64,000 nt of DNA from Ruditapes philippinarum (GCF_026571515.1 NW_026867019.1:124001-188000); one strand, 5' to 3'; positions 8,006-48,387 are shown, counted from the first letter of the stretch. Translations and numbers: made by a program. Notes: generated by a model from the sequence alone, not told the origin.

Positions 8006-8197
8006 TCAGCGCCACAGGAAAATTGCTTGCGGAGTAATTATCTTTCGTCCACCTCCACAAATACTGGCACCATTACCTCCCGTCCCACCTGAAGCACTAC
8101 TTCCGGCTCCACTTCCTCCCCCACCGCCCCCAGCACCTTCAGCTTGGCCTCCCTGACCACCTGCACCACCTGAATTGTTCGAGTTAGTGTTGCACAT
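8006..8197 (-). CDS. Glycine-rich microprotein family A, copy A1 (63 aa, starts MCNTNS)
   Basis: Intact ORF paralogous to 12463-12657 and 32023-32217; 5'UTR intron 8205-8425 (GTAAGT...TTGACAG); AATAAA at 7867-7872. Confidence 0.8.
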   Translation of the reverse strand: MCNTNSNNSGGAGGQGGQAEGAGGGGGGSGAGSSASGGTGGNGASICGGGRKIITPQAIFLWR

Positions 8198-8425
8198 TTT
8201 TTCACTGTCAATTAAAAGTGTTTTAAGATATTAATTATAATCCGAATTACATATTGTCTAATAGAAAAACAACAACAACAAAAAAACAACAAATTAAACA
8301 TTAAAATAAGAATAAAGATACAAATAAGTACTGGAAGTAAAATATATACATCTTAAACACTGTTTGCTGCATTGTCACGTTCAATGTTGTATTAATTAAC
8401 TTAGTTTATAACGTCATCGACTTAC

Positions 8426-8515
8426 CTTTATATTGAAGATTTTCTGAGTTCACACTTTATCGAAGAATACTTGCTTTACTGAAAATACAAGTTTTGTCTA
8501 CCTTATACTTTTATA
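8426..8515 (-). promoter_or_regulatory. Non-coding exon 1 and core promoter of A1
   Basis: TATAAAAG at 8515-8508, TCAGT initiator-like motif at 8482-8478, then AG|GTAAGT donor at 8425. Confidence 0.55.
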
Positions 8516-9337
8516 ACATAGAATAGTAATGCATGTATGTATTAACTGAAGCATGAACTATATATAGCTTTACCGGTCAACTATGTTAGTGATATATGAT
8601 TGTTTTAAAAGTCATACAGACATTTTATCCTCCATTATTTATTACAAATAAACGCATACTCTCTGTTGTCATGACGTAAGCTTTTATGTGAATGGTTTGA
8701 ATAACAAATGTAATAATTGTAATAAGAAATGTAATAATGATAATAAAATGTAATAATTATTTTATTTTTTTCAAAATCAGCAGTAATTAATTAAAACGCT
8801 TCTGACAACCAAGTTCACTTACATATAAATAATAATTCAAATATTACAGTTACTGTATTAAAAGTGATTTAAGATATATTAATGATACTGTAAAGATTTA
8901 CCTTGTTAGCATACAACATACAAATGTATGATATGTATTCCTAGTCTTGCCTTTTTATAATAAAGACTTCATTATTTGGGAAACTAGCGACATACCCCAC
9001 AAACTTAATCTGAATTATTTATAGAATTGAAAAACCGTAATATTATGGCTTATTTGTGTCTATAAATAAAACAAAGTGCATGTCATATGATCAATTTAGT
9101 CATAAATGCGGTGATATGGTGACCTTGTAGAATTTTAACTTTTGTATGTTCCTTTATACTTTTATACCCGCTCTACTGATATTGTGACAGAAACATTTAG
9201 TGCATGTTATCATTAGGAAACCCACATTACATGTACAAATCAAGTCATAAAATCATGATGGGGGAGTCAATATCTTTTAAATGAAATAGACCGGGGAGGT
9301 GCTTATACTTCTATGGTGGTCACTTGACTTCGTTTCA

Positions 9338-9440
9338 CTGGTCTGCCACACACAAGGACCAGGATCGCCATCTTCATTGTCACGTCCAATTAGGATATTC
9401 ATTCCACTGTCTTAATCAACCCAAACTCTTCCTCTACCCT
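9338..9440 (-). pseudogene. Inverted relic of a family C Gly-rich module
   Basis: Minus strand reads NILIGRDNEDGDPGP then gtggcagaccag, versus NVPSGHDGEDGEPGP...gtggcagaccag in C genes; in-frame stop upstream. Confidence 0.6.
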
Positions 9441-10577
9441 ATATATCTCCCTCATAAAGAACAAGATAAATCGAAGCTGTTAACACACACACATACATAC
9501 ACGCATGCACGCACGCACGCACACATAAATAATACGGAAAATGAAAATGGAGTAAATTTAAATACGCTGTAATTTGTCCAATGAATTGTTCTTATGTATA
9601 GAATGTAAATAACATAATTATTTTAGAGCATTGCATTATCATTGCTGCATAATATACGAAAATGAAAGTAAGATTTATTGGTTAAAATATACGCAAATTT
9701 GAACCCACTGTTTACAAATTTACAATAAATTCAAATTAAATATTCCACGATGATAATAAAATACCCGAGTTACCAGTAACACGTCTCTTCTATAGGCATT
9801 ACATGATTTTTTTTGGCGTTTCTTTCTTTTTTTGAATTTTTTTCGTTTACCTCAAAGTTCTGATTAATATGATTCGAAAGCAAATTTATTTAGAAATGTG
9901 ATGTCTTTTTGATAAACACTTCATCATTGTGGTTTTATTAAATATCTTATAGCAGACATTCTGGTACCTGTATATATGAAAAATGATAAGTTCAAACAAT
10001 GACGGCGTCAGAGAAATAAGAACAACGTTAAAAAGCGCATGGTATACATGTCTTTTTGCAGACTTCACGTCTAATTGTGGACGTCGCTCAGCACATAAGA
10101 ACATCGTTTTATGAATTGTATACAATATCAACAAATATCTGACTTTATTATAAATTCAATTTGATTGAAAAATATATATGGTTTAGGGTTTTTCTTAATA
10201 TCATCTTTTTTATTTAAAGAGTTATAAGTAAACATGAGTTTGTTGTTATAGATAACTGATATTATCTTTTATTAATACATATATATAATTAGTCGTTACT
10301 TCAATAAAACAGATGACATTGTTGCTGGGACATACTAGTCAAAGATTGTTTACAAAAGCATTTTAAGTATATATATTTTTTTAAACTATAATTTCTATTT
10401 AGTAACGCAAAACCTTAAGACTATAAAACATGTAGTATTTCAATGAATCCATACCATCAATTGAAAAAAACTGATCTTTCATTAACTAAAACATTCTCGA
10501 AATAAAACGAATGATATCATAATTATAATTGAAGTGCTCTGAAGTATGGCGAGTCTTTATGTGGCGAATCGTCTCTA

Positions 10578-11413: not shown

Positions 11414-12462
11414 TATTGTGCGGCGACTGGCAATGGGACGAATCGTCACTAAAGTGGGTCGAGTCCTTGGGCATCATAACGCATCAGTTATTGATATATC
11501 TGATTTTGTTTGTAATCATCCCGGGGCATTTTGAAAATCTCAGACGTTTAATACTTCACATATTTAACTTTTTAAAAGGATATTATTGTTTCGTTAAGCT
11601 CTCATTAAACCATTTCTATGAAAGATTTGAACATTAACATATCTACAAAGCACAAGACACGACGCCATACAATGCAAAATTCAAATATATATAAAATTCA
11701 TATATACAAATTTGATTTCTATCCACACCCGACAGTTTACCGTATACTAAGAATAGTATTGTCAGGTCCTATTTCGTCTGTATCGTGTGCAATTATACAC
11801 GTGTATTTTGATAATACTGTCCGCTATATTTCAGTATTTAACTTATTCCGGGGAAAATTAAATATAATGTTGTAAGCAATTGATGTCCAAACCGTTTGCT
11901 ATATATTTATCGTTTATGACATTATCATACATATTTAAGGTGCCATAAAATAAGTTTAAACTAAACAATAAGTATTGTAATTCTATGGCGTATATAATAA
12001 TATAAAAGAAAAAAAATAACAGCATAAATGCTTCGATGCTTTTCGTATCCGAACGACTGGCCGTGTGCGATCATTGGATTCTATATGGATCAATAAGCAC
12101 CGTGAATTACATGTATGAATTGTCGATGTTGATGAAAAGAATGGTCAGGGACAATAACACACAACAATGTTATCAAAAAGGAATAAATTTATTACCATAA
12201 CATATACTTAATTTACATTATTGAATAATTACATGAGTTCATCATTTTCTGTCAAAGTTCAAACTGTCTTATGAACGCATATGATTGGTTTATACATCAG
12301 ATACCAAGTAACACAGTGCACATTTTTGATCGATATTGTTACAAATTTGTCTGTTTCAATGTTATGAAGATGATACCTGAGACAAACAAGAAGATAAGAT
12401 AATCGATATTGTTATATGAAAATGAAGTGATAGATAATAAAAGGAGCTATTAAAGTGTTTGT

Positions 12463-12657
12463 TCAACTCCATGGAAACAGGCCTGAAGGGTAGAGGTATC
12501 TTCTGCCTTCACTTCCCCATAACTTGCCGCCATGTCCACCGTTTCCACCTGGAGCATTACTCCCGGCCCCACTTCCTCCCCCACCACCTCCTGCACCAGC
12601 GGCTTTTCCTCCTTCACCTCCTGCTCCGCCTGAATTGTTTGATCCAGTATTTCCCAT
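12463..12657 (-). CDS. Glycine-rich microprotein family A, copy A2 (64 aa, MGNTGS... ends YLYPSGLFPWS)
   Basis: Intact ORF; acceptor TTAACAG at 12664-12665, donor GTAAGT at 13220; Gly triplet pattern conserved among paralogs. Confidence 0.85.
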   Translation of the reverse strand: MGNTGSNNSGGAGGEGGKAAGAGGGGGGSGAGSNAPGGNGGHGGKLWGSEGRRYLYPSGLFPWS

Positions 12658-13243
12658 TTTATTCTGTTAATTAGAACGAAGTAAATATACAATGATATCG
12701 ATGAAATGTATTTATATAACGGATAATGTACAAATATATGCATTAAGAATTGCGAATCTTAACTGAGTTTTAAACTTGTTATGTTTTAAACTGAGTAAAC
12801 AATGTTAAAGTTTTCAAGTCTACAATCTAATTAAAATCAGCTCCTAATTCAAGCTATGTATTAGATCTGATGGTCATTTCTTTGCGACCTTTTAAACAAT
12901 CAATCATCAGCGAGCTTTTACAAATTTCAATTTTGAAAGCAATGCTGTTTCTAATTTTAACCACTGGAATACCAATTCTGAGTAGGTTCATATAGCTGAC
13001 AAGTACAATTAAGGTAAGACTAATTCGGTGACAACAATATCTTAATGCAGGAAATAACGTAAGTATATATGAACTTAAGTCTGATTGCCAGACGTATTAT
13101 ATATAATTAAATTTAAATCAATAACGAGCACACTCCGATCAGCATAAAATTACACAAATAATTTAAAACTTTCGACACAATAACTTTCGATATAATATAT
13201 AAAGCTAAATCTTTACTTACAGAAAGTTATTGATATATCTTGA

Positions 13244-13527
13244 TATTATTAGTTATAACGATTGTTGACAGGTTATATGGCCCTATATAAACGGTTGTTT
13301 GTAAATATAACCCGAGCCGTCAGGCGAGGGTTATATTGCAAACAGTCGTTTATATAGGGCCATATAACCGGTCAACAACCTTTATAACGAATTTATAATA
13401 CAGCAAGCATCCTTTTTTAGAGAAAAAAGTAAGATTTCTTCATGAATCGACAAAAGACGTGTATATAAAACTATATAAACGTCACGATTATCCAATGAAA
13501 AGCGACGTTACAAACGTGCAGTATTAT
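13244..13527. mobile_element. About 280-bp palindromic insertion with 6-bp direct repeats (Crypton-like non-autonomous element; family inferred)
   Basis: Near-perfect palindrome 13252-13388; TATTAT at 13244-13249 and 13522-13527; absent from the paralogous site at ~25035. Confidence 0.7.
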
Positions 13528-14520
13528 AAGTATATATATATACTTTCCAATTCGACAATTTACTGCAAATATAAAGGTATAAATAAATATTACAAATATA
13601 ATTATATAATTGTATTTCGATTTTTCCAATCAAGTATTCTAAACGTTTTATATTGTTATTCCATTTTATATAGTTATTCAATTCAAGTATTTACCATGAC
13701 AGACAGGTACAAAATAAAATTAGTAAATTAAAATTAGTAAATAGTGATAATATCATGATCATTATGATAATTATTGATACTATATGGAAATAAACAAAAG
13801 AATGTAGAAATAAGAAATATATTTATAATGTAAACAATTCGTAAACACTTACATTTATTGTACAATTTAAACGCATTCACTGAATAATGTGTTACTTCTG
13901 TACAGCGTACTATGAATTCTGTTTTATACGGGAACACATGAATAATTGGAAAACCAATGAGCTAAATTTGGGATACAGGTATGTTACTTTGAGGAATCCA
14001 ACTTCAAAATTCAGAAAAAGATCAATTAAATTAGTTTTGAATGCTTGAAAAATTACTGATAACTGTTGCCTATTTATAGATTGGATGACGTATTTAAGAT
14101 ATCATGTCGTTTGTTATTCGGAACAATTTTAAGGGCCCTAATATGCTTCTTGGTATCTTTAATTAAGTACTAAAGTATGTACGACACATCATTATTTGAT
14201 TTGTTTCACTGAATAACTCTTTTTCAATTTCGGTAAGTTCATTTACTTTTTTTAGGTCGATCGAATAATTTTTGTCTTCTTCAGTAATATTATAGCATCA
14301 ATCACTGTTTTAATGTAACGTTCATGTATATATGCTGTCAATATATATTATAGAAAAACAAAGTTTGAAAATGCACTTGAAAAGATACAGATTTTTACCA
14401 TGATTAAATGTTAATATAATTGTCATTAGAAGTAACTTTACACCTAATAGAGAAGTTATCTTTGAAAAGTATAATTATAAAGTATGATATTTCCTTATTT
14501 AACAGTTTCCAGTGATAAAC

Positions 14521-14805
14521 ATGGGAAATAGCAACGACACAAATTATGGTGGCGGCGGCGGGGGAGGAGGTTGCAATGGTGGGGCGGGTGGTGGTGGTGG
14601 AAGTGGTGGTGGACCTGGCGGAGGAAGAGGAGGAGACGGAGGACGTCCAAGACAGAACGGTCAGGATGGTCAAGATGGTGTTAATGGCGGTGGAGGAGGA
14701 GGTGGTGGTGGAGGCGGGGCAGGAGGAGGCAGAGGGGGGAGAGGAGGTCGTGGAAGTGGAAATGGAAGAGATGGACAGAACGGACAAGATGGAAGTTATT
14801 ATTAG
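14521..14805 (+). CDS. Glycine-rich protein family B, copy B1 (94 aa, MGNSND...GQDGSYY)
   Basis: Intact ORF from ATG 14521; donor GTAAGT at 14233, acceptor AG at 14504-14505 or 14511-14512; paralog at 33436. Confidence 0.85.
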   Translation: MGNSNDTNYGGGGGGGGCNGGAGGGGGSGGGPGGGRGGDGGRPRQNGQDGQDGVNGGGGGGGGGGGAGGGRGGRGGRGSGNGRDGQNGQDGSYY

Positions 14806-16721
14806 ACGACAAACTGATGTTAACATTCATTTATTCATTCATGTTTATATATTTATTTAGATATATATTTCTAAAAGAGAATAATGGAAACGTTTTATTT
14901 GTTTAACGCTCTTGGAGATGAATAATCAAAATTAGATTATTTTATTCAGTTAATTTAGTTAAACAATATTAACAATATTTGTGTAAAAAGAAACATGCAT
15001 GATTAAGTAAAATATCGATATAGATTATTCACTTTTATACTCACAATATTATTTTTCGATACTAGTTTAATATCCAACAAATGTGGCCATTTTCATTTAA
15101 TAGAAAATATATGCATTGGCTATTGATTATCAAATGCAAGACTTATATATAGAAGTATGCATGTTTTAAATAATTTCAGTGTTATAATTAACTAATTCTT
15201 ACACTCATTTATAATTTGAATGTTTATACGATGTATTTGTCTACACAAAATATGTCAATAAGTTTAAGAAAATAAAAAGGATAATACCTCACAACAATTA
15301 TCTCTTCTTCTTTTTTTCTTTATGCGAATATGGTCCAGAGCATGGCCATGTTTATCGAAACATTAATTGATTTGTTGATTAAAAAAAAACACCTGTTGAA
15401 GAATAAGAACATCGTTACTTCTAATACAATGGTTATAAATAAACATATTGTATTGAATACAGAACTTGATCACAGTTAGATCTACAACAACAAAATAAGA
15501 AAAATAAAACAACTAGAACAATGGTGGTACCTCTGGCTTGATTCGTAATTGTTTGATTATGATTACCAAATATGAAGAAAAGGAAAACAATGTTCACATT
15601 ATAAATAATTACTTTAGTCGTAATAAAATAATATGTCAAATGATAGTTTACAGTTATCCATCGTATGGCATAGCAGTCATTTTTTTTTTCATATAATGTT
15701 TCATGAGATTTAACGTATATTCAAATAAAAACTAGGTGTTCGGCATAAATAGCCACAAATAAAGTCTTTTTTTACACCGTTAAACAGGTCCGGTCACATG
15801 AAAATCAAGAGGAATTTAGGATGTAAGTAATATCTGTTCACGAGTGAGTAAATAAGTACTGAATAGTGGTGATAATTGAAGAACCAAAAGAGTTAAGGAC
15901 GCATAAAATGATGTACATTACATTATATCACGTAAACGCACTCAACATTAGTCTAGCAATTTTATTAATTCTTTTAGGTTTATGTTTACTAAAAGAGGAA
16001 TGTCAGACCAAGTTTATACACGATTGGGAAACAGTTTTAAAATTTTGTTTGATCTATTTATAGTCTAGACAAAATCAGAATATGCCCGAAATAACGACCT
16101 AATCTAACTTTACTTGGTATATTATAGAACAAATATATCGTTAATTATCAAATTTAAAAGACAAAGAATTGTTGATAATAATAATAATGATGTAGGTATA
16201 TGCAAACACGTTCGAGCTTTATATCAATCATATAAAATGATTGATATAAAACATGTCTTACTGTATTGTCATTTATTTATGACAATCCAGTGTTTTGGAA
16301 TCAAATTCTATTTTTAACAACCCAGAAAACCAAAAGTTGTATCAGCTTAGAAAGAAATTGAGTTTAACTTATTATATCTAAAATTAAAAACAAATCAGTT
16401 ATTGAAGCATAGTAATTATTTACTTTCGCTTTCATTATCGTATTTCAAAATGTATTTTATAAATACACACAACTCACCATTTTAAATTTACGCACAAAAT
16501 TCATAGGTTGGGTTTCCAATGATAACAAATGCTGAAATGTATTTACATAAATTGAAACAACTGAATTGAAAGGAATTAAGAAGAAGTAAGATACAATTTT
16601 GTCTTCATATAAACTTTTTATTTCTATTATAACATATCTTTTATCTATTTAAAGATACTCTGGTTTAAGATCTATGTTGAGGTATATAATTTACCTCAGT
16701 TGATAAAATCTCACGGAACAT

Positions 16722-16797
16722 CACGTAAAACATTTAATTTGTCTTCCACATATGTACATGAATGTTATCACGTCAATTTCTACATATTTGCACGTCA
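16722..16797. promoter_or_regulatory. Cluster of three CACGT motifs upstream of C1
   Basis: TCACGTA, TCACGTCA and GCACGTCA just upstream of the non-coding-exon donor GTAAGT at 16821; all three conserved at 36320-36395. Confidence 0.45.
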
Positions 16798-16937
16798 TAA
16801 TTGTCGTGGGAAATAGTACTGTAAGTATTGTTTTTCATACAAATTTTATTGATACAATTACAAGGTTATATTCGACTTTATGACATAGATTACATGCTTA
16901 TATATATATTTAAATATTGCAGGTAATAAACGAAAAC

Positions 16938-24058: not shown

Positions 24059-24240
24059 TTAACTCCATGGAAACACGCCTGAAGGGTTGATTTATTTTTT
24101 GCCTTCACTTGTGCCGCCATTTCCACCGTTTCCGCCCGGAGCAGTACTCCCGGCCCCACTTCCTCCTCCACCACCTCCCTGCACCCGGGCTTGTCCTCCT
24201 TGGGCCACCTGGGTCCGGAATTGTTTATCAATTTTTTCCA
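24059..24240 (-). pseudogene. Family A copy A3, no ATG and frameshifted as assembled
   Basis: GGGGGGSGAGSTAPGGNGGNGG core and PSGVFPWS* tail retained; the 5' part lies in homopolymer-rich, low-quality-looking sequence. Confidence 0.65.
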
Positions 24241-27318: not shown

Positions 27319-30300
27319 CATACAACTTCAAAACTTTGACTCCTTCGATGTTATGGTGTTTTTTCGTTCTCATATATTAGTTTTTAAGATAAAAGTATAA
27401 ACATCTCAAATAAAAGCAAATGTTTAGCAAAATAATATTTATTGCCGGAATAAGGTTGTTTTCCAATGACTTAATTTTATTGTATTGTTTCTATATCTCA
27501 ATTTAAATGTAAAACAATTACATAAATAATCGAAGATTTTAACTCTCTCATATCAAACAAGAACACAGTAAAACATTGATTAATAAAATTGTGTTTTTAC
27601 TTATTGAAACGAAATTCACAAAATGTGTATGAGATCTTGTAGTCTGATAGGAAACCCGTGTACAGAGTATATTGATATTTGGTAAATGCAAATATATTCT
27701 GTAATATTTTGTTATATTGCTGATATTTACTTTTTTATTTATAGTATATTGTGTATATTCAAACAGTATCTTGACAATGACTGCATATCGGGCGATACAG
27801 GTTTTGACTATCCTGTATTTTTGTTGATGTTACCCCTATCGTAGGCAAACGAAAGACAGATGGCGATGGTTATATTGAAGGACTAAACAAAATATAGAGA
27901 TTTTTGAATGGGTCGGATTCTTATCAACAGACATGTGATCTTTTCATTGTCAGAGGATTGAAATATTCTCCGAACTATTCTGATATAACATGTATTTGTA
28001 ACATTGCGTCAATTTAATGATTATCAACTGGGTATAACTGATGTAAACTAATTGTGTTGTTTCTGTATAGTTCAACTTTAAAATTATAGATTATGCGGTA
28101 TCTAAAAGGGTTGGCATAGTAATTAAGACTTTTCAGTTGTTAATACTAAAATATTTATGCAAGATATTAAGATATATAAAATTCCCTTGAGAGCATCAAT
28201 TATAACAATACTAAAATAGTGATAATTACAGAGTCGGTTTGATTAAAACTGTTTATCTTTAGAGATAATAACAGGTCCAACATTCATCACGTTCTCAAGC
28301 GTAATTCAACACAAAGAGTAATGTCTATCAGTGATCCCAAAATAACATCACTATGATGAAGCTTACTATTCTATAGCTTCACAGTTTTTTATACATACGT
28401 GTATAATCAATGTCCCATTTTTATAAATCATATAATGTTTTATTTTATTTAAAATCAATTATTTCATATCATCATCTTTACTTAAAAAATTGAAGCTCCT
28501 GATATTGTATCCAATATTCCAATTAAAGCAAAGTTAAACTCAAAATTAGTATTTAATTCATATGGTAGACATCAACTTGGTCAGTGTACATTTACAGAAA
28601 TTATTATTACTGGTGATTTAGTTAAATCAGAAAATTGTATAAATTATAAGGATAAGGATATAAGGAGTATCTCTGTATAGAAAATTAAATTAAAAAAAGA
28701 TGTCAAAGGAAGTGTCAGACACTTATGTTAATTGCTTTTGAAACAGAAATATCAAACAATATCTTACGGAATATGCTACCTTATTTATTGTACTAATTCT
28801 TGACGGTTCGCACCTGCATTTCTGCATTGCATTATTCTCTGTTTTATAGAACAGAAAAGACTTGCAAAAATGGAGGGAAGACAAAATATGAACGCTGAAA
28901 TTAATCTTGAGACTCTATTGAAATAAATGTATCTAATTGTTTTAAACAATAATTTCAACGATATAAAACTCGAAATATGACCGTTTTAAACAAGCACGTT
29001 TTCGGTTGCTATGTATCCTATAAAAGGAAGAATAGAATTAAAACTTTTGACAGTTGTAAATGATTGTTTTAAGAACCGTGCACCGACATATATGATATAT
29101 ATAATATGCTATTGGTGGGCTTGTACATATCTCGTAGAATCAATCTTGAGACCGGTATAGCGTGTCATCATACGTCATAACTATTAAGGGTCGCGGCCAA
29201 ATTTCCATATCAAAATACACGAAACACGAACAGACATAAAGATGATAGTTTAGTTGCTTTTGATTATAAGAGCAATATACTTTCGTTACACAGAAAAAAA
29301 GACGTCTAGAAACTTTAGTCAAAATACAGTTCCTAGTGTTGCCACTACCTTTACATTTGAACAAAGTCGTTTCAATTTCGTTTTCAGATTTCTATTGATA
29401 TATTATCGTAATAAAGACAAATACAGTATAAATAAAAAAACATGTCATCCCAGTATTACAACCAGAAAACCCTTATTATATTAAACCTTACATATGTCAT
29501 CTTAACAAAAAAAGAGACCACATCTCATGTTAAATTAAAAAATACTCTTTAGTTCCTTAGAAACGATCAAATTCTGTCTTGGATTAAATATATATTTTTT
29601 TTTCGTTCTAGGTTTTTAATACAATTATAATTCCACTAATGACACTTGTACTAAAAATAGGAAATATTACGTGTGTATAACAGATAATGGTGCAATTATA
29701 GAAACACATGTATTTATAATTATAGAAACATGTCAATGAATAAAGAAATACCTTATTCGTGATTCAGATTGAAAATAGATAATATGTTTTTGGTTTCTTA
29801 TCCTAAATATAAAAACAGTTAACTGAAACATTAGTCATCCTGAAAATTCCTGTTATGTCGAGTGATAATTGTGAATATTTATGTCAAAAGGGTAAAGATA
29901 TATGAATCTAAATGGCTAAATGATGATAATAAACTAGTATGTGTCCGTTATACGATATACCTATAGATAATAAAATACTTTTGGCAAAAGCTGTCACAGT
30001 AATCCAGTTATTATGTACTTACGCACCTGTCGGGTCCTTTAATAAACACATTAGCATAACTTAATAAATAATTCCTACATTTTTACAATTGTGAAAGAAA
30101 TAGTTGTTGCATTAAAATATTATCCTATAAGAATTAAAGCGCTTTAGCATTTTGTATGGAAGACGAGAACAAAGATTAACAAGACCAAGGCAACGTTCAT
30201 AGGGCGGAGGAAGTCAAAATAGTACTTTTGTTTCATTTTGCTACTTTTATGACAAATAATTTCCACTTCAACACTACTTTCTTCAGGTAATAAGTATTAA

Positions 30301-32022
30301 ACTGTTTCAAAAAAATATTTTAACGATAAAAAAACTCCTAATTGCCTTTTCTAAAGAATGAAAATAATGTTGTTTCTCAGGTATAATATGCCTTTAATAT
30401 GTATTCCAAGCTTTTCAATATGTTTTAACCATATTTTCACGCGATAAATTTGAACAATGAAAGAATAAAGTATACAAGAAAGATGTTATGTATTCATATT
30501 TACGACGTATGAACGTTATTTCTCTGAATATTGGACTACATTTAAACTTTGTAATATAAAAGGTCAATTATCGGCACTTCTCACTTCAATGATTTGTTCT
30601 CTACTTGTTTTGTAGAGCCATTGCTTAATGCAACGCTATAATTTATTATTCTTAACACTTCGTTCTCTCGTTTATAACAAGGTAAATTATCCCTTGATAA
30701 AAACTTGGGATTAGTTATGGTTTAAGTCAAGAGGAGTTTCATTGTACCGTTAGTTCCGTAGACGTTATAGCTATTGACACCGCTGTGGGTTCTAATAACA
30801 TATACTATTAGGTTTATGCCGCCTATCAGTATCTACCTTTAATTTATGTGAAGACGTCCTAAAACGTGACAAAGATTTCCTAAACTTTTACTATTTGATT
30901 ATTGACAAATATAATTATGGCCAGTCAAAATTACAAAATAATACAATTCAAACGTTTTTTTTCTTAACTTCTTGAATATCTTAGTTTTGTATTCTTATTT
31001 TATATAAATATATCTGTTTATATTTGTTTACTACTGTTTAAATATATCTTCATCTCCAACACCCTGATTAATTTATACTTTATTGGAACCTTAAGTCAAA
31101 GACAAACACATATTTAACTCTTATAAAGGATATTACTGTTTAGTTAAGCTCTCAATAAACCATTTCTATAAAAGATTTGAACATGTACATATCTACAAAA
31201 CACAAGACACGACGACATACAATGCATTATGGCGACCTAGAATTTGGCAAAACGATTTTATACAGTCAAATTTGATTACTATCCACACCCGACAGTTTAC
31301 CGTATACTAAGAATAGAATTGTCATGTCTTATTGTTTCTGTATCGTGTACAATTATACACGTGTAGTTTGATATTACTGCCCCGTAATATTTCTGTATTT
31401 AATATATTCCGGGGAAATTAAATTTAATGTTGTAAGCAATTGATGTCCAAACCATTTGCTTTTGCTATATATTTATCGTTTATGATATTATTATACATAT
31501 TTAAGGTGCCATAAAATAAGTTTAAACTAAACTACTAGTAAAAGTATTATAAATCTATGATGTATATGATAATATATGAGAAAAATAACAGCACAAATGC
31601 TTAGATGCTTTTATTATCCGAACGACTGGCCGTGTGCGATAATTGGGATCAATAAGCACTGTGAATTACATTTATGAATTGTCGATGTTGATGAAAAGAA
31701 TGGTCAGGGACAATGACACACAACAAAGTTATCAAAAAGGAATGAATTTATTACCATAACATATACTTAATTTACATTATTAAATAATTACATAAATTCA
31801 CAATTTCCTATCAAAGTTTAAAAACGTTTTATATACGCATATGATTGGTTTATAAATCAGATACCAAGTAACACAGTGCACATTTTTGATCGATATTTTT
31901 ACAAATTTGTCTGTTTCAATGTTGTGAATATGATACCTGAGACAAACAAGAAGATAAGATAATCGATATTGTTATATGATAATGAAGTGATTGATAATAA
32001 AAGAAGCTAATAAAGTGTTTGT

Positions 32023-32217
32023 TCAACTCCATGGAAACACGCCTGAAGGGTAGAGGTATTTTCTGCCTTCACTTCCCCATAACTTGCCGCCATTTCCACC
32101 GTTTCCGCCTGGAGCCTGACTCCCAGCCCCACTTCCTCCTCCACCACCTCCGGCACCAGGGGCTTGTCCTCCTTGACCACCAGCTCCGCCTGAATTGTTT
32201 GATCCAGAATTCCCCAT
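32023..32217 (-). CDS. Glycine-rich microprotein family A, copy A4 (64 aa, MGNSGS...)
   Basis: Intact ORF, acceptor at 32224-32225; the upstream non-coding exon seen in units 1 and 2 appears deleted near 32560. Confidence 0.75.
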   Translation of the reverse strand: MGNSGSNNSGGAGGQGGQAPGAGGGGGGSGAGSQAPGGNGGNGGKLWGSEGRKYLYPSGVFPWS

Positions 32218-33435
32218 TTTATTCTGATAATTAGAATGAAACAAATCCTCAATGATATTGATGAAATATATATATTACGGATAATCTACAACATATGCTT
32301 TAGATATTATTAATCTGAATTTGTTATGTTTAAAACTGAGTTAACAACATTTAACAACCAATACTGAGTAGGTCCGAATAGCTGACAAGTAAACTCGCAA
32401 AACAATCTTGTACATTAAAATTTGAGTCTATTGTTCCGAGTTTATTTGTAAACAATTTGTTTCTAACGAAAATCAACAATTTGTTTTACTTCAATGAACA
32501 GCGATATTTTGATACTTCTTTTAATGCCTATGTGTCAGGATTGTTTGAATTCATGGCTAAGTACATAAAAATTAGTAAATAGTGATAATATTATGATCAT
32601 TACAATAATTGTTGATACTATATGGAAAGAAAACAGAAAAATGTAGAGAAAAAAACAGATATATAATTATATCTTATATAAAGAATTCATAAACACTTAC
32701 ATTTATTGTACAATTTAAACGCATTCACTGAATAATGTGTTACTTCTATACTGCGTACTATGAATTCTGTTTTTATACGGGAACACATGAATAATTGGAA
32801 AACCAATGAGCTAAAATTGGGATACCGGTATGTTATGTCTCATACTTTGAAAAATCCAACTACAAATTTCAGAAAAGATCAAGTACATTAATTTTGAATC
32901 TTTGAAAAGTTACCGATAACTGTTGCCTATTAATAGATTGGATGACTAAATTAAAAGATCATGTCATTTCGTAATTCGGAACAGTTTTAAGGGCACGAAC
33001 ATTCTTCTCGATATCTTTAATGAAGATAGTAAAGTATGTACGACACATTCTTATTTGTCTTGTTTCACTGAATAACTCGTATTTTCAATTTACGTAAGTT
33101 CATTTATTTATTTTTTTCAGATCGATCTAATATTTTTTTTGTCTTATTTCGTAATATTATAGCATCAATCACTTTTTTTAAGTGTAACGTTGATGTATAT
33201 ATGCTGCCAATTATGCTGCCAATATATATTATAGTTAAACATAGTTTGAAAAAGAAGCGATTGAAAAGATACAGTTTTTTTCCATTATAAAATGTAAATA
33301 TAATTGCCATAGCTTTATATACCGAGAAAATTTGAAGTACTATCACACCTAATAGAGAGAGAGAAATAAGTTAACTTTAAAAAGTATAATAACAAAGTAT
33401 AAAATTTTCTTATTTTACAGTTTCTAGTGATAAAC

Positions 33436-33705
33436 ATGGGAAATAGCAACGGCACAAATTATGGTGGTTACGGCGGGGGAGGAGGTTGGAAAGGTTGGGC
33501 AGGTTGGGGTGGTGGAGGTGGTGGTGGACCTGGCGGAGGGAGAGGAGGAGACGGGGGACGTCCAGGACAGGACGGTCAGGATGGTCAAGATGGTGTTAAT
33601 GGCGGTGGAGGAGGAGGTGGTGGAGGCGGGGCAGGAGGAGGCAGAGGGGGGAGAGGGGGTCATGGAAGTGGAAATGGGAGAGATGGACACAACGGACAAG
33701 ATTGA
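33436..33705 (+). CDS. Glycine-rich protein family B, copy B2 (89 aa)
   Basis: Paralog of B1; a GGA>TGA change at 33703 removes the terminal GSYY; three Trp codons in the N-terminal Gly segment. Confidence 0.75.
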   Translation: MGNSNGTNYGGYGGGGGWKGWAGWGGGGGGGPGGGRGGDGGRPGQDGQDGQDGVNGGGGGGGGGGAGGGRGGRGGHGSGNGRDGHNGQD

Positions 33706-35468
33706 AGTTATTATTAGACGATAAACTGATGTTCATTTATTCATTCATGTTTATATATTTATTTAGATATATATTTCTAATTGGAAAAAGTTTTATTTGT
33801 TTTACGTTTTTGAAGATGAATTATTAAAATTAGATTATTTTATTCAATTGTGATTTTAAGACTATTAATCTAACGATTTTTCCCTGGAAGATTTTCTATC
33901 TTAATGTGTATGTATTAACTAATTGCTTAAATGTTCAATTAAGTAATTAGTAAATAGAGCCAAGATATTAATTATTAAGTTAAATATCAATATATTAATA
34001 TTTATACTCGCGATATTATTGTTCGATACTCGTGTCATAGCCAACAAGTGTGCTCACTTTCATTTAATAGATAATATCTGCATTGGCTATTGATTATCAA
34101 ATGCACGACTCATATTATATATTGAAGTATGCATCTTTTGAATCATTTTAGTGTTATAATTAATTGATTTTTACACGCATTTATAATTTGAATGTTTATA
34201 CGATGTTAAATTAATTAATGTATTTGTCTAAACAAACTATGTCAATAAGTCTTAGAAAATAAAAAGGGTAAAACCTCACAACAATTTTTTCTTCTTCTTT
34301 TTTCTTTATGTGAATATGGTCCAGCGCATGGCCATATTTGTCGAAACATTTCATTGATTTGTTATTCAAAAACAAAATAACACCTGAAGAAAAATAAGAA
34401 CATCGTTACTTCTAATACAATGGTTATAAATAAACATATTCTACTGAACACAGAATTGGATCACAGTTAGATCTAATACATTTGATAATCATAATGTATT
34501 GACACCTATTAGAGTCGCAGCATCTTACTTCGTTTTGAATATGAGTCATTGTATAACATTGGATATAATAAATCAAAAGTGTCAGAATTATAAAATGAAT
34601 TTTTAGCATCATTTATGTAGGAGAGAGGGGGAATCATGGTTAATTATACACACTTTACCCCCCCCCCCCCCTAAAAAGAAATAGAGAACGAAGAAAGAAA
34701 AATAAAAAAGAAGAAAAAAGATGACAGAGGTGACTAATACAATAGTATCTCTTATATGATTCGTATTTGCTAGATTAAGATTACAAAATATGATAAAACA
34801 ATGTAAACATAATACATAATTACTTTATTAGTGACATTGTTGGATTGTAATTCAATTATGTGTTTACTGATAGTAAACATTTATCCGTCATGTAGCATAA
34901 CAGTCATGTTTTTCATTTGATTTTTTTTTCAAGAGTTTTAACCTGTATAAAAATACCAAATAGATATTCTGGCATAAATAACCACACATATAGTATTTTA
35001 TGATCTGTTAAACAGATCCGGTCACAGGAAAATTAAGAAAAAATTAGGAAGTCAGTCATATCTTTTCATGAATGAGTAAATATCAAGTACTGAATGGTGG
35101 GGGCATTGAAGTACCAAAGAGATTACTGTAATTCGATACAAGGAAGCGTGAGATGACGCACGTTAAATCATCTCACGTAAACTCATTAAACATTAGTCTA
35201 GCTATTTTATTCATTATTTTAGGTTGATATTTGCTTAACGAGGAAAGTAAAACCAAGTTTATACACGACTAGGAAACAGTTTTTAAATAGTCATACTTAA
35301 ATTTTATGTGAAGGGCAGAGTAAATACAAGAAAAGAATATGCCCGAAATAACGACCAAATCTTACTTCACTTAGTATATTATAGAACAAATACATCGTTC
35401 TTCCATCAGATTTGAAACAATTAAGAGTTATATTAATAGCTGTGTAGGTATATACAAACACGCTTTAT

Positions 35469-35785
35469 ACCATTTTTTTTTCCATTTTGTTTAGCTCCGC
35501 CCATTGTTTTCTCGTTTCGGATACACGCTTTATTTTACTTAGGGACCAAACGCCGCTTTTCGATGAATGGCATGGAAGTGTCACACTGATAACCGTCGTA
35601 TGTTTCTAAATTCAAGATTTTGCAATTTCATGTTTAAATATTAATTTTAGTTAAGTCGGTGCTAGAGCGCGTGGGCGGTAGTTTGCTCTTGACAGTACCG
35701 TCCATGAACAGGCTCAATCAAACAGAGCCTGCAACATTTTCAATTTTGCAATTTTGTATTTCTTTAGGGATTCTTATTGTCTCTA
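35469..35785 (-). mobile_element. Insertion of dispersed repeat family X, specific to unit 3
   Basis: Reverse complement of tagaga.aataagaatccctaaagaaa...gttgcaggctc.gtttgattgagcctgttcatggacggtactgtcaag; absent from the unit 1 site at ~16215. Confidence 0.7.
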
Positions 35786-36319
35786 TATTATAATAATATG
35801 GAGTGATTAACATAAACTTGATTTACAAAGGCAGTGCGTGTTTTGTCAATTTATGATAATTCAGTATTACTATGAAATCATATTCTATTTTTAAACATCC
35901 AGAAAACTAAAATTCGTGTCAGCTGATAGTCAAGCTTCAGACAGAAGTTGAGTCAACTCATTAAGTCTATAATTAAAAACAAATCAGTTACTGAAACATA
36001 GTAAATATTTACTTTTGCTTTCGTTTTTGTTTTTCAAATTGTTTTTTATAAATACACTTAACTCACTATTTACATGATTTACGCACAAAATTTACAGTTT
36101 GGGTTTCCAACGATACAATGCTAAGATTTAGTCACGTGAATTATACCAACTGAAATGAAAGGAATTAAGAAGAAGTAACTAAAGATACAATTTTGTCTTC
36201 ATATAAATACTTTATTTTTGTAATAACATACATGTATACATTATCTATTTAAAGAGACTCTGGTTTGATATCAATGTTGAGGTATATCATTTTATCAGTT
36301 TATAAAACTAACAGGACAT

Positions 36320-36395
36320 CACGTAAAACATTTAATTTGTCTTACACATATGTACATGTATGTTATCACGTCAATTTTTACATATTTGCACGTCA
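36320..36395. promoter_or_regulatory. Cluster of three CACGT motifs upstream of C3
   Basis: Same three motifs and spacing as 16722-16797; donor GTAAGT at 36419. Confidence 0.45.
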
Positions 36396-36539
36396 CAATT
36401 GTTGTGGGAAATAGTACTGTAAGTATTGTTTTTCATACAGTCAAATTTTATTGATACAATTTCAAGGTTATATTCATCTTTATGACGTAGGTTATATGCT
36501 TCTGTATATATTTCAATGTTGCAGGTAATAAACAAAAAC

Positions 36540-38640
36540 ATGAATGACTGTAAAAACACTGTAGTTCTCACGGGATTAGGAAGTGATATCAAGAAAGAGG
36601 ATTTTATCCAACATTTCAAACGTTTTGGAGAAATACTAGTATGATTTTAGCTTCCTTTCTCTAAATAATATCTCGATATATTAATCAAGACTGGTGTTCA
36701 TTTAAGTTTATTACCTGTGTCTTATCTTGTTTAAATAACGAACATATCACTACATTCGCCGCGACAGATTTCATATGATACACATGTCTTTCATTTGGGT
36801 AACTTAAATTGTAAGACATATACTTAACATTTATTTTAACAGCAGTTTATTTTCCTTTCCTTAGCATACTAAAACATATTTTCTTGTTTGATCCTCATCT
36901 CCACACATATCGTATGGACTGAGATAAATACTTTCATTATTGTTTTATGTATACGTTAAGTATTGTTAAATATGAAGATATAAATGCATACTGGTATGTA
37001 TATTAACACAGAAATGTAACCTGGTAACTACAGGATCGGAAGGGAGAGTGACATATGCCGACTCTAAAACTGCGGAAAAGGCTATTAAAGAACTTGATGG
37101 TAATTATTTTATAGCATAATAAAACAGCATTAAAATTTTTGCATTAATATATTACTGTATGCGAATCAGCCTAGCCTTAAATATGGTTACTATATTTCAG
37201 ATATGATTAAAAATAAGTCCGCAATATTTAAAACTGTTACCGATGTGTGCACTACTTATTTACAAACGAAAACCAAGATAATTAAAAATCATATAAAAGT
37301 AATAACGACCCTTAATAGACTTAAAAAACCTTATCTTAATAAACAATATAATTTTATGTCAATTCGAATGCTTCTTATTCTTAATATTTTTGCATTATTG
37401 TACATGGTTTCAGGAAAAGAAATAAACGGAAATGTGATCAAAGTTAAAGTGATGGACAAGTGTCATAACAACGATAATATTCACGATGCAGGTAAAAAAA
37501 GTTAAATGGTTTCGACTAATATTCCGAATATTTGAGTCATCCTCTGATTATATGAAATCATTGCTATCAATAAGCTATTTATATATAAATGTTTACGTAA
37601 TTATTATAAAATTATGCCAATTGTGATGAAAGCCATGAAATCATATACATACATCAAATAAATCTAGAGTTTATTACTTTAATAAGAAACAACGTAACGA
37701 ATAATAAACAACACAAGCTTTTATCTATTTTAATTGATAGCTTAGTTGAATTAAATTAAAGTTGAATTAAACTGTGTAATACAATAGGGTTTCAGATTAT
37801 GGTAACAACACAACAAACAACCAAAATGATTGACATTGTGATGAACACCACAAAAAAAACTTTGGTGGCGGTAAAGGTGGAAAAGGAGGCATCGGAAGTT
37901 CGAACGTTCCAAGTGGAAATGATGGTGAAGATGGCGAACCGGGTCCTGGGGGAAAAGGTGGTGCAGGTTGTTAACCGGCTATAACTAATCCAAAACTTGG
38001 TAAAAGGGCCTTTGAATCATATGATGGATTGGCTAATAATATGAAGAACAAATATGAATGTTCCGGTGGTGGAAAGGGTGGTAAAGGTGGAATCGGGGGT
38101 CCGAACGTTCCGTGTGGACATGACGGTGAGGACGACGAGCCTCGTCCTGGTGGTAAAATTGGTGACGGTGGTAGACCAGCGGTATCAAAAAATGACTATA
38201 CATGGAATGGTAACAGGAACAACGATCCATGGTTTACAAGATGGTTTGGTATTGGAGGGCCTAAAACGACAAATGAGGAAGAACATAATTCATCAGGAGA
38301 CGGAAGAGGTGGAAAAGGCGGAGTAGGTTACAATAATGTTCCAAGTAGACATGACAGTGAGGACTGCGAACCTGGTCCTGGTGGTAAAGGTGGTGCAGGT
38401 GGCACACCAGCAGTGTCGAAAAATGCCTATACACGGAATGGTAACTGGAACAACGATCCATGGTATACAAGATGGTTAGGTATTAGAGGGCCTAAAAAGA
38501 CAAACGAGCAAGAACATAATTCTTCAGGCGGTGGAAAAGGCGGAGTAGGTTACAATAATGTTCCAAGTGGACATAAGGGTGAAGACGGAGAGGCCGGTCC
38601 TGGTGGCAAAGGTGGTAGGGGTGGTAGACCTGCAATGTGA
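36540..38640 (+). CDS. Family C copy C3: intact RRM exons (36540-36638, 37012-37099, 37414-37491), last exon 37796-38640 with stops at 37831 and 37972; four Gly-rich modules
   Basis: All splice sites canonical; the spliced product ends after 100 aa; the downstream frame is open from ATG 38041 to 38640. Confidence 0.75.
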
Positions 38641-41450: not shown

Positions 41451-41463
41451 TTATAATACTTTT

Positions 41464-41660
41464 TGGACGTAAGGATCGATATTTGTGAGGAATAAATAAT
41501 CAATAATGCATAATTTCTCGATTTTCCTTGTTTATTCTATTTATTAAACCACGTTTTCTCTAAACCGGAAATACATAAAACAGGTCTAACACCACTAAAA
41601 ATATTACTTCTTTCAAAAAAGGCTTATTCGATTAGAAACTATAGTTAACTCTTTTGGACA
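41464..41660 (-). repeat. 3' LTR (197 bp)
   Basis: No difference from 48388-48584 by eye. Confidence 0.95.
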
Positions 41661-48382: not shown

Positions 48383-48387
48383 ATTTA

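What the first reader, a model, noticed from the sequence alone, without database searches (positions are those of the whole stretch)
8006..38640. Candidate new system: co-duplicated cluster of three intracellular Gly-rich (putative polyproline-II bundle) protein families
Seen: three non-alignable families (A, B, C) sit together and were duplicated as a unit. All are built from 8-12 residue Gly-X-X segments (GGxGGxGG, GxDGxDGxxG, poly-Gly) separated by short turns, and none has a signal peptide. Knowledge: this segment pattern forms antiparallel PPII helix bundles in snow-flea antifreeze protein, the ALK/LTK glycine-rich domain, Obg and phage S16 gp38, where poly-Gly strands fill the core. Known molluscan Gly-rich proteins such as shematrins are secreted. 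Inference: these may be a functionally linked, co-assembling cytosolic or membrane-tethered module (lipid-anchored A, core-rich B, RRM-bearing C), perhaps for stress, cold or immune function.
Basis: partly seen in the sequence, partly recalled or inferred. Interest (0 to 1): 0.88.

Follow-up and report, generated by a model that had tools for sequence, protein, structure and literature searches.

The report
Clam-only cluster of glycine-rich protein genes
The Manila clam carries one tandemly duplicated, transcribed cluster of three kinds of small glycine-rich intracellular proteins, found at no other locus and in no other named species in the databases searched; their glycine pattern is strongly conserved, but their fold and function are still unknown.

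Summary
In Ruditapes philippinarum, an A(-)/B(+)/C(+) gene unit at 11557-21379 recurs at 31107-39869. It recurs again, without B, at 22051-29909. More A and C copies lie upstream on the same contig and nowhere else in the 1.4 Gb genome.

- **Transcription:** all three genes are transcribed and spliced at GT..AG sites.
- **Gene products:** C is a real RRM (Pfam 44.6 bits) that lacks the usual RNP aromatic residues. It is followed by three 40-residue Gly modules. A (64 aa) and B (94 aa) start with MGN.
- **Selection:** purifying selection is strong on the C module (pN/pS 0.08-0.14, p down to 1e-10) and on A (about 0.2, p about 1e-7). It is not shown for B.
- **Homologues:** none were found outside this species apart from a few unnamed metagenome contigs.
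- **Fold:** the polyproline-II bundle idea fits the triplet register. AlphaFold2 gave no confident model. The ESM Atlas model of B is only moderate, and its neighbours are PGRS-type and phage Gly-rich models.

The three families share short motifs, so they probably diverged in place. Co-duplication shows linkage, not functional coupling. The co-assembly test (A with B) gave no answer. Several copies are damaged.

The scan's only earlier notes on this DNA are first-reader notes on this same window.

The parts
8006..8197 (-). A0: diverged A-family copy (63 aa, starts Met-Cys, so it has no Gly2)
   Evidence: Against A1, pS is 0.63 and pN 0.22.
11557..21379 (.). Duplication unit 1 (A1, B1, C1 with their flanks)
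   Evidence: self-BLASTN; per-feature identities
12463..12657 (-). A1 coding exon (64 aa plus stop; starts MGNTGS)
   Evidence: An exact-match RNA contig spliced at 12663 is in table 8.
12664..13220 (-). Intron in the 5' leader of A1 (GT..AG on the minus strand)
   Evidence: joint 12663->13221 in runs X1 and X2
13247..13532 (.). 286-bp high-copy element with TA..TA ends inserted in the A1 leader; absent from the X1 transcript
   Evidence: joint 13246->13533, and depth in the thousands over 13240-13640
14232..14504 (+). Intron in the 5' leader of B1 (GT..AG)
   Evidence: joint 14231->14505 in X2
14521..14805 (+). B1 coding exon (94 aa plus stop; starts MGNSND; 56% Gly; contains RGGRGGRG)
   Evidence: exact-match RNA contigs; letter-for-letter record in the ESM Atlas
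16938..17036 (+). C1 exon 1 (start of the RRM; identical to residues 1-33 of NCBI model P0001)
   Evidence: joint 17036->17393
17393..17478 (+). C1 exon 2 (RRM); carries +1, -1 and -2 indels relative to C2 and C3 in this assembly
   Evidence: Run X2 has transcripts without the extra G at 17423.
17736..17813 (+). C1 exon 3 (end of the RRM)
18171..18783 (+). C1 exon 4: three 40-aa Gly modules (18239-18358, 18431-18550, 18662-18781), linkers and the stop
   Evidence: joint 17813->18171/18182
22051..29909 (.). Duplication unit 2 (A2 relic and C2; the B segment is deleted)
24062..24304 (-). A2: decayed A copy (no start codon, one internal stop)
25415..27318 (+). C2 gene (exons about 25415-25513, 25959-26046, 26321-26398, 26708-27318). 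It equals NCBI LOC132734522 isoform X2 (P0011). The exon 1 donor reads GA, not GT.
31107..39869 (.). Duplication unit 3 (A3, B3, C3)
32023..32217 (-). A3 coding exon (64 aa, 88% identical to A1)
33436..33705 (+). B3 coding exon (89 aa). Five substitutions put Tyr, Lys and three Trp into the first poly-Gly segments (three Gly, one Cys and one Asn replaced), and the stop comes 4 codons earlier than in B1.
36540..38640 (+). C3 gene (exon 1 at 36540-36638, exon 2 about 37012-37099, exon 3 about 37414-37492, exon 4 at 37796-38640). An in-frame stop lies at 37972-37974, after the first module.

Best explanation
This is a young, fast-turning-over tandem gene cluster found, in the databases searched, only in Ruditapes philippinarum (the unnamed metagenome contigs aside). 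It grew by segmental duplication of an A-B-C unit. It encodes three related kinds of glycine-rich proteins without signal peptides.

Shown here:
- The genes are transcribed and spliced.
- The Gly-rich frames are the coding frames for A and C.
- The 40-residue C module (GGGKGGKGGxGG, a NVPS turn, GHDGEDGEPG, PGGKGGAGG) and the A core are held almost residue for residue and without indels, while their synonymous sites are near saturation.
- C carries a genuine RRM that lacks the canonical RNA-stacking aromatic residues.

Inferred:
- The conserved XGG/GXY triplet segments form short polyglycine-II/PPII helices that pack side by side, with Lys-rich strands against the Asp/Glu-rich strand.
- C would then be an RRM-anchored array of three such modules, acting as a scaffold or adaptor in RNA-protein or protein-protein assemblies.
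- A would be a myristoyl-anchored microprotein with the same kind of Gly core.
- B would be an RGG-type Gly microprotein.

The three types most likely diverged from one local ancestor. Their joint duplication reflects physical linkage and has not been shown to reflect functional coupling.
For: Duplication as a unit: with feature-wise identities.

Single locus: all A, B and C matches in the 1.4 Gb genome lie on contig C15506 between 95.6 and 162.6 kb.

Transcription and splicing: GT..AG joints and exact-match RNA contigs for A1, B1 and C1 in two runs from different studies.

RRM: RRM_1 at 44.6 bits against a cut-off of 20.7; AF2 pLDDT 62-84 over residues 1-80; PDB RRM matches.

Selection:
- Modules within one protein have pS 0.33-0.60 against pN 0.05, ratio 0.08-0.14, p 1e-4 to 1e-10.
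- C2 against the P0003 locus gives omega 0.31, p 5e-6.
- A1 or A3 against A0 gives omega 0.14-0.19, p 3e-7 to 6e-9.
- The two upstream A copies differ by 8 synonymous changes and 1 non-synonymous change.
- 13-15 of 22 aligned Gly pairs use different codons, while only 5 Gly positions are lost.

Other sequence features: there are no indels in the module or in the A core. Non-Gly residues have period 3. Gly codons are mixed and DNA tandem repeats are only short and imperfect, so the Gly runs are not microsatellite-like DNA.

Shared motifs: the A and B N-termini align with hhalign probability 66%, and the B C-terminus aligns with the C module at 46%.

Fold leads: the ESM Atlas model of B has pLDDT 0.63 and pTM 0.55. 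Its nearest models are PGRS proteins, a phage Gly-rich protein (TM 0.79) and Gly_rich_2. The neighbours of P0001 are PE_PGRS models. PGRS and phage Gly-rich domains are described as PPII bundles in PMC13243192.
Against: - AlphaFold2 gave no confident structure for the Gly parts: pLDDT about 28 in C, and 46 with pTM 0.12 in B. The alignments held only 6 and 2 sequences.
- Foldseek and PDB sequence searches found nothing.
- The Atlas neighbours are predicted models with modest scores, which makes them leads only.
- B has only two recent copies, and its pN/pS (0.44-0.67) does not separate reading frames.
- Many copies are damaged in this assembly: A2, A0 (G2C), B3, C1 exon 2, the C2 donor site and the C3 stop. 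Recent pairs show omega 0.4-0.55, so constraint may now be relaxed.
- No orthologue in another named species is known, and no function has been tested.
- The raw RNA runs X21 and X23 show only about 1-3x depth.
Confidence: 0.5

Rival explanations
1. The Gly regions are intrinsically disordered low-complexity domains (RGG/KGG type). C would be a lineage-specific glycine-rich RNA-binding protein in the manner of CIRBP, GRP7 or FUS. A and B would be small low-complexity partners. All would act through multivalent weak contacts or condensates, without a fixed PPII bundle.
For: The architecture is an RRM followed by a Gly-rich tail. The RRM matches those of FUS, TAF15 and CIRBP among others. B has an RGGRGGRG stretch. 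AF2 pLDDT is about 28-46 over all Gly parts. No fold match was found.
Against: Disordered low-complexity regions usually conserve composition, not position. Here every residue of a 40-aa module, its length and the NVPS turn are kept at pN/pS about 0.1 across near-saturated synonymous sites. The A core keeps a run of exactly six Gly across copies that differ in codons. The RRM lacks the RNP1 and RNP2 aromatic residues that usually stack on RNA (sequence reading of P0001).
Confidence: 0.28
2. One reading: A (lipid-anchored), B (core-rich) and C (RRM-bearing) co-assemble into one PPII-bundle machine and were duplicated together because they work together.
For: The three genes are linked and are copied as a unit. 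A and B lie head to head, with spliced leaders starting within about 1 kb of each other. All three are high in runs X1 and X2 and low in X21 and X23. That is four runs, and contig depth is a poor measure of expression.
Against: Block duplication needs no functional link. Unit 2 lost B, and extra A and C copies upstream stand without B. B is the least constrained of the three. The shared motifs suggest common descent. No binding evidence exists.
Confidence: 0.1
3. The proteins are intracellular ice-binding or antifreeze proteins resembling the snow-flea AFP. They would help an intertidal clam survive freezing.
For: Size, Gly content and XGG/GXX segments of 9-12 residues resemble Collembola PPII antifreeze proteins (general knowledge; PMC10235112 and PMC13243192 listed).
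Against: There is no signal peptide, whereas known PPII antifreeze proteins are secreted. The outward positions are Lys, Asp, Glu and His, not small flat residues. No sequence or fold match to solved antifreeze proteins was found. An RRM fusion has no place in an ice-binding role.
Confidence: 0.04
4. The cluster is largely decaying, transcribed DNA. These are young orphan ORFs on their way out, and B in particular is not a functional protein.
For: Defects occur in A2, A0, B3, C1, C2 and C3 in this assembly. Recent paralogue pairs have omega 0.4-0.55, not significantly below 1. CDS identity is barely above flank identity between units 1 and 3. A and B are absent from the searched protein databases.
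Against: Older comparisons show strong purifying selection in A and C. Spliced transcripts reach depths in the hundreds. Run X2 holds transcripts in which the C exon 2 frame is intact.
Confidence: 0.08

Closest known systems
Glycine-rich RNA-binding proteins (plant class IV GRPs such as GRP7; vertebrate CIRBP/RBM3; the FUS/TAF15 RRM+RGG type)
   Same: One N-terminal RRM followed by a Gly-rich C-terminal region, with no signal peptide. The RRM of C aligns to the FUS, TAF15 and CIRBP RRMs among others.
   Different: Beyond the RRM there is no sequence relation. The Gly part is three strictly conserved 40-aa modules with Lys and Asp/Glu in a triplet register, joined by Trp-rich linkers, and it is not an RGG/YGG low-complexity tail. 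The RNP1 and RNP2 aromatic residues are replaced by Ile and Thr.
Snow-flea and other Collembola polyproline-II antifreeze proteins (PDB 3BOG, 2PNE)
   Same: These are small proteins built from 9-12 residue Gly-X-X or X-Gly-Gly segments joined by short turns. This resembles A (64 aa) and B (94 aa).
   Different: The antifreeze proteins are secreted and disulfide-bonded. No sequence match to any PDB chain was found. No confident bundle was predicted. The exposed residues here are charged.
PGRS domain of mycobacterial PE_PGRS proteins (PF21526), modelled as a PPII-helix bilayer
   Same: Both have GGxGGx repeats. NCBI names three of the clam proteins 'PE-PGRS family protein ...-like'. PGRS models are among the nearest ESM Atlas structures to B and to P0001.
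   Different: There is no PE domain and no Pfam PGRS hit. The host is eukaryotic and the genes have introns. The NCBI name reflects composition only.
Phage glycine-rich receptor-binding domains (Salmonella phage S16 gp38, PDB 6F45; mycobacteriophage Bxb1 gp33)
   Same: The best Atlas structural neighbour of B is a 376-aa phage protein (TM 0.79 by query). Such phage domains are polyglycine-II sandwiches (PMC13243192).
   Different: There are no PHROG or PDB sequence hits. Both sides of the comparison are predicted models. The biology is entirely different.
Secreted molluscan Gly-rich proteins (shematrins and similar); other Gly-rich tandem clusters noted in this genome (s1-803732, s1-803748)
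   Same: Both are lineage-specific, tandemly duplicated Gly-rich genes in a bivalve.
   Different: Those proteins carry signal peptides and, in s1-803732, a Cys-rich tail. A, B and C have none and share no motif with them as described.

Membership tests
RRM_1 (PF00076) domain proteins | Pfam RRM_1 score above the gathering cut-off | tested here: met
   P0001 residues 8-72 score 44.6 bits against a cut-off of 20.7. The AF2 model shows the order strand, helix, two strands, helix, strand over residues 7-75, with pLDDT 62-84.
RRM_1 (PF00076) domain proteins | Canonical RNP2 and RNP1 aromatic residues that stack on RNA | tested here: not met
   Sequence reading of P0001. RNP2 is V-I-I-T-G-F, with Ile where Phe or Tyr is usual. 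RNP1 is E-G-I-V-T-F-A-D, with Ile and Thr at the two aromatic positions. RNA binding is therefore uncertain.
Glycine-rich PPII (polyglycine-II) helical bundle domains | Several 8-12 residue segments with Gly at least every third residue, separated by short turns | tested here: met
   Segment maps and lag-3 periodicity: z 5.7-7.1 in C, 3.3 in B, 1.9 in A. Module alignment.
Glycine-rich PPII (polyglycine-II) helical bundle domains | A confident three-dimensional model or solved structure showing packed PPII helices | tested here: inconclusive
   AF2 pLDDT is about 28 for the Gly part of C and 46 for B. Foldseek against the PDB gave nothing. The ESM Atlas model of B has pLDDT 0.63 and pTM 0.55, with PGRS and phage Gly-rich neighbours.
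Glycine-rich PPII (polyglycine-II) helical bundle domains | Sequence relation to a solved PPII-bundle protein (sfAFP, gp38, ALK Gly-rich domain, Obg) | tested here: not met
   No PDB chain matched at E up to 10, either for the C module profile or for B. No Pfam family matched.
PE_PGRS proteins | N-terminal PE domain (PF00934) and PGRS domain (PF21526) | tested here: not met
   Pfam scans of the Gly exons, P0001 and P0003 found neither.
N-myristoylated proteins | Met-Gly start fitting the PROSITE PS00008 pattern G-{EDRKHPFYW}-x(2)-[STAGCN]-{P} | tested here: met
   By reading. A1 (GNTGSN), A3 (GNSGSN), the upstream A copies (GNVDAT) and B3 (GNSNGT) fit. B1 (GNSNDT) does not, and A0 has Cys at position 2. 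The pattern is permissive. Actual acylation cannot be tested with these tools.
Collagen-like proteins | A long uninterrupted Gly-X-Y run (tens of triplets), usually with a signal peptide | tested here: not met
   Each C module has only about 7 consecutive Gly-X-Y triplets, in the stretch that starts GHDGEDGEPG. There is no signal peptide.
Secreted molluscan Gly-rich shell-matrix or antimicrobial proteins | N-terminal signal peptide | tested here: not met
   The first 30 residues of A and B hold no hydrophobic stretch. C starts with the RRM.

The most novel reading that the evidence does not exclude
These would be the first animal intracellular polyglycine-II/PPII bundle proteins. A newly born 40-residue Lys/Asp/Glu-zipped PPII module would be arrayed three times on an RRM (C). 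Free-standing microprotein versions of it (A myristoylated, B) would have arisen and diversified within the Ruditapes lineage. This would give a natural, cytosolic, modular PPII scaffold.
Probability: 0.25. Interest if true: 0.8.

Novelty: new variant of a known kind. Interest (0 to 1): 0.5.

Why it matters
Gly-rich PPII bundles are a rare fold. They are known from a handful of secreted or viral proteins, from Obg and from the extracellular ALK domain, and protein designers want more natural examples. A cytosolic, modular version fused to an RRM, under strong selection and born recently in one clam lineage, would be useful in two ways. It would be a new structural building block, and it would be a clean case of orphan-gene birth and diversification. 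If the regions turn out to be disordered, the cluster is still an unusual case of residue-for-residue conservation in a low-complexity protein. Either way, NCBI's 'PE-PGRS-like' names for these clam genes are compositional artefacts.

Tried and rejected
- **Family scans:** Pfam and PHROGs scans of the Gly exons gave nothing.
- **Homologue searches:** word-indexed searches with A and B found no hits, not even the query proteins themselves. A profile search of 1.84 billion representatives with the C Gly region found only clam or unnamed metagenome proteins, plus one spurious bacterial repeat protein, P0008.
- **PDB sequence searches** with the C module profile and with B gave nothing.
- **Structure:** AF2 models of C and B had low confidence in the Gly parts. 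Foldseek of the B model against the PDB gave nothing. I ran no further fold searches because low-confidence models give meaningless matches.
- **Complex prediction with B plus A:** no answer, score 0.02. This is evidence neither for nor against binding.
- **Metagenome scans:** The scan with A5 found no relatives.
- **Literature:** searches for Ruditapes with glycine-rich, for PE-PGRS with Ruditapes, and for glycine-rich RNA-binding protein in bivalves found nothing specific.
- **dN/dS of C1 against C2 in exon 4** (about 2) was discarded as uninformative. The exon sits in a tract of 95-98% identity that includes intron and 3' flank, so it was probably converted or duplicated recently.
- **Frame test on B1 against B3** did not single out a frame.
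- **HGT from bacteria or phage was rejected:** the genes have spliced leaders and introns, lie in AT-rich animal DNA, and have no sequence homologue anywhere.
- **UHM-type RRM was considered and dropped:** there is no Arg-X-Phe motif.
- **Spliced models:** I sent no self-joined spliced model to any search. Full-length work used NCBI's own models P0001 and P0011, and exon-by-exon references otherwise. One script joined C2 exon coordinates only to check boundaries. Its output was out of frame and was not used.

Full report
**Organism and locus.** The database names attached to the proteins encoded here identify the genome as Ruditapes philippinarum, the Manila clam. The window is contig C15506:124001-188000 of a 1.4 Gb assembly. 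The DNA is AT-rich, about 31% GC, and has no N runs.

**What is there.** A six-frame scan for Gly-rich open frames finds three types.
- Type A lies on the minus strand at 8009-8230, 12466-12666, 24095-24304 and 32026-32274.
- Type B lies on the plus strand at 14503-14802 and 33403-33702.
- Type C lies on the plus strand at 18155-18781, 26692-27315 and 37834-38637.

Self-BLASTN shows that 11557-21379 (unit 1) is collinear with 31107-39869 (unit 3). It is also collinear with 22051-29909 (unit 2), which lacks the segment 13804-16900 that holds B. The matches run through introns and intergenic DNA at 72-88% identity.

**The cluster is a single locus, larger than the window.** Six-frame searches of the whole genome with A, B, NCBI's C model P0001 and an A profile return matches only on this contig, between 95.6 and 162.6 kb. 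I fetched the 30 kb upstream. It holds two more A-like genes (L002:7262-7447 and L003:6793-6978, minus strand) and two of the three upstream C-like pieces; the third starts at its end, at about 103.9 kb. One of these C-like pieces is the annotated 220-aa protein P0003. B exists only twice.

**Gene models and transcription.** I read the sequence and laid two RNA-derived contig sets and two raw RNA runs on 12440-18439. This gave the following.
- **A1** is a single coding exon (12463-12657, 64 aa, starting MGNTGS). It follows a leader intron at 12664-13220, with GT..AG on the minus strand, seen in X1 and X2.
- **B1** is a single coding exon (14521-14805, 94 aa, starting MGNSND). It follows a leader intron at 14232-14504 (GT..AG). 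Its ATG is the first after the acceptor and has A at -3 and G at +4.
- **C1** has four exons (16938-17036, 17393-17478, 17736-17813, 18171-18783), with joints 17036->17393, about 17441->17735 and 17813->18171.
- Exact-match contigs with word depths in the hundreds cover A1 and C1 exon 4. Exact-match contigs over the B1 coding exon have depths of about 14, and binned depth over B1 and its 3' end is 67-372 (tables 2 and 8).
- The raw runs X21 and X23 show only about 1-3x depth.
- All three genes are therefore real spliced transcripts. The same two runs are high for all three and the same two are low. This is only a weak hint of co-expression.
- A and B lie head to head, with start codons 1.86 kb apart. 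A shared promoter is an inference.

**C carries an RRM.** NCBI's full-length model P0001 hits RRM_1 at 44.6 bits against a cut-off of 20.7. AF2 models residues 1-80 with pLDDT 62-84 as an RRM-type alpha/beta fold. The best PDB sequence matches are RRMs of SPEN, SR proteins, HuD, FUS, TAF15 and CIRBP. The RRM is atypical: the RNP2 and RNP1 positions that normally carry Phe or Tyr hold Ile, Ile and Thr (sequence reading).

I sent no spliced model of my own joining to any search. Full-length work used the database proteins P0001 and P0011, and otherwise I worked exon by exon by reference.

**The Gly parts.** C exon 4 holds three 40-residue modules. Across ten module copies there are no internal indels; two copies are short at one end. 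Nineteen columns are invariant, including Lys, Asn-Val-Pro, Asp and Glu positions as well as Gly.
- Non-Gly residues recur with period 3: z 5.7-7.1 against shuffles in C, 3.3 in B and 1.9 in A.
- Each module reads as an X-Gly-Gly segment with Lys outward, then a short NVPS turn. A run of seven Gly-X-Y triplets follows, its first half acidic and its second half basic.
- Two of the three linkers are Trp/Tyr-rich and are conserved between C and P0003.
- Gly codons are mixed, and DNA-level tandem repeats are short and imperfect. So this is not microsatellite-like DNA.

**Selection.** This is the strongest new result.
- The three modules inside one C1 protein differ at 33-60% of synonymous sites but at only 5% of non-synonymous sites. 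The pN/pS ratio is 0.08-0.14, with Fisher p from 1e-4 to 1e-10.
- C2 against the P0003 locus gives omega 0.31, p 5e-6.
- In A, A1 or A3 against A0 gives omega 0.14-0.19, p 3e-7 to 6e-9. Against the upstream copies, synonymous sites are saturated while pN stays at 0.26-0.27 (p down to 6e-10).
- The two upstream A copies differ by 8 synonymous changes and 1 non-synonymous change.
- Of 22 aligned Gly pairs, 13-15 use different codons, while only 5 Gly positions are lost.
- The A core, including a run of exactly six Gly, has no indel in five copies.
- The Gly frames of A and C are therefore translated and constrained residue by residue. This is not what composition-only low-complexity regions usually show.
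- For B the only comparison is recent (omega 0.44-0.67). It does not separate reading frames. B's coding status rests on its spliced mRNA, its first-AUG context, the preserved ORF and its motif kinship.

**Recent history is messier.**
- Between units 1 and 3, coding identity (87-93%) barely exceeds flank identity (82-90%), and omega is 0.4-0.55.
- C1 and C2 share a tract of 95-98% identity running from intron 3 to about 1.5 kb past the stop. This points to recent conversion, so their exon 4 dN/dS is uninformative.
- Several copies are damaged in this assembly:
  - A2 has lost its start codon and has an internal stop.
  - A0 has Cys at position 2.
  - B3 carries five substitutions in its poly-Gly segments, three of them to Trp, and stops 4 codons early.
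  - C1 exon 2 has three indels.
  - The C2 exon 1 donor reads GA.
  - C3 has a stop after module 1.
- NCBI's isoform X1 (P0001) joins C1 exon 1 to C2 exons 2-4. Isoform X2 (P0011) is all C2. C1 is annotated without its RRM as 'PE_PGRS16-like' (P0012).
- Run X2 holds transcripts in which the extra G of C1 exon 2 is absent and the rest of the exon is in frame. So intact alleles or copies exist in other animals.
- This looks like birth-and-death evolution with presence/absence and allelic variation.

**Are the three families unrelated?** Not quite. hhalign aligns the A and B N-termini (23 columns, 57% identity, probability 66%). It also aligns the B C-terminus with the first 24 residues of the C module (50% identity, probability 46%). 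A against the C module gives only 5%. Composition inflates such scores. Even so, these links together with the shared single locus make in-place divergence from one Gly-rich ancestor the simplest history. C would then have gained RRM exons.

**Relatives elsewhere.** Word-indexed searches find C only in R. philippinarum plus one unnamed ENA contig. A and B find nothing. An exhaustive HMMER profile search of 1.84 billion representatives gives seven hits. Two are named R. philippinarum proteins (P0001, P0003). One (P0006) clusters with the named R. philippinarum protein P0009. Three (P0004, P0005, P0007) come from unnamed JGI or ENA contigs. The JGI metagenome scan found nothing. No paper mentions these genes.

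**Fold.**
- AF2 with the shallow alignments available gave pLDDT about 28 for the Gly region of C, and pLDDT 46 with pTM 0.12 for B. Foldseek found nothing. PDB and Pfam sequence searches found nothing.
- The ESM Atlas holds B letter for letter with a moderately confident model (pLDDT 0.63, pTM 0.55). Its nearest models are PGRS proteins, a 376-aa phage protein (TM 0.79 by query) and a Gly_rich_2 cluster. The low-confidence Atlas model of P0001 also sits next to PE_PGRS models.
- PGRS domains and phage Gly-rich domains are described as PPII-helix bundles (PMC13243192; bioRxiv 10.1101/2023.11.25.568672).

The PPII reading therefore rests on three things: the register, the residue-level constraint and weak model-to-model similarity. 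It is plausible and I put it at about 45%, but it is not shown.

**Co-assembly.** One complex-prediction job (B with A as partner) returned no answer, with score 0.02. Block duplication itself does not imply functional coupling. Unit 2 lost B, and the upstream A and C copies stand without B.

**Verdict.** These are real, expressed genes for intracellular Gly-rich proteins, found in no other named species. C bears an RRM, A has a myristoylation-type start, and A and C are under strong selection. The PPII-bundle fold is unproven. The co-assembling module and any cold, stress or immune role have no support. The NCBI 'PE-PGRS-like' names reflect composition only.

The LTR retroelement next to the cluster was only observed.

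Noticed in passing
window 41460-48584: An LTR retrotransposon sits just downstream of the cluster. It has two 201-bp LTRs (41460-41660 and 48384-48584) that are 99.5% identical, and an uninterrupted 1747-aa gag-pol-type ORF on the minus strand (43016-48259). It looks like a recent insertion. It was observed only.
   Followed up: no
window 13247-13532: A 286-bp element with TA..TA ends and internal inverted repeats lies in the 5' leader of A1. RNA depth over it runs to the thousands, presumably because there are many genomic copies. One X1 transcript joins 13246 to 13533, so that animal lacks the insertion. This is probably a polymorphic MITE.
   Followed up: partly
window 54917-55849 (minus strand): A 310-aa open frame rich in Cys with repeated EGF-like or furin-like CxxC spacing. 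It is probably an exon of a MEGF-type or other Cys-rich repeat receptor gene and is unrelated to the cluster.
   Followed up: no
window 3345-3589: DNA here is 72% similar to the intron 2 / exon 3 region of the C genes and shows a faint exon-3-like translation (E 1.5). It is probably a relic of another C copy upstream of A0.
   Followed up: partly
window 16938-17036 with 25959-27318: NCBI isoform X1 of LOC132734522 (P0001) uses exon 1 of C1 together with exons 2-4 of C2, which implies an intron of about 8.9 kb spanning the rest of C1 and A2. Whether this chimeric splice is real could not be checked.
   Followed up: partly
window 17814-20300 vs 26399-28800: Units 1 and 2 share a tract of 95-98% identity, including intron 3 and the 3' flank, while their other parts are 85-91% identical. 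This suggests a recent gene-conversion or secondary duplication event.
   Followed up: partly
window 61524-62264 (minus strand): A 246-aa open frame whose sequence looks like the C-terminal part of a non-LTR retrotransposon reverse-transcriptase ORF. This is a reading only and was not scanned.
   Followed up: no
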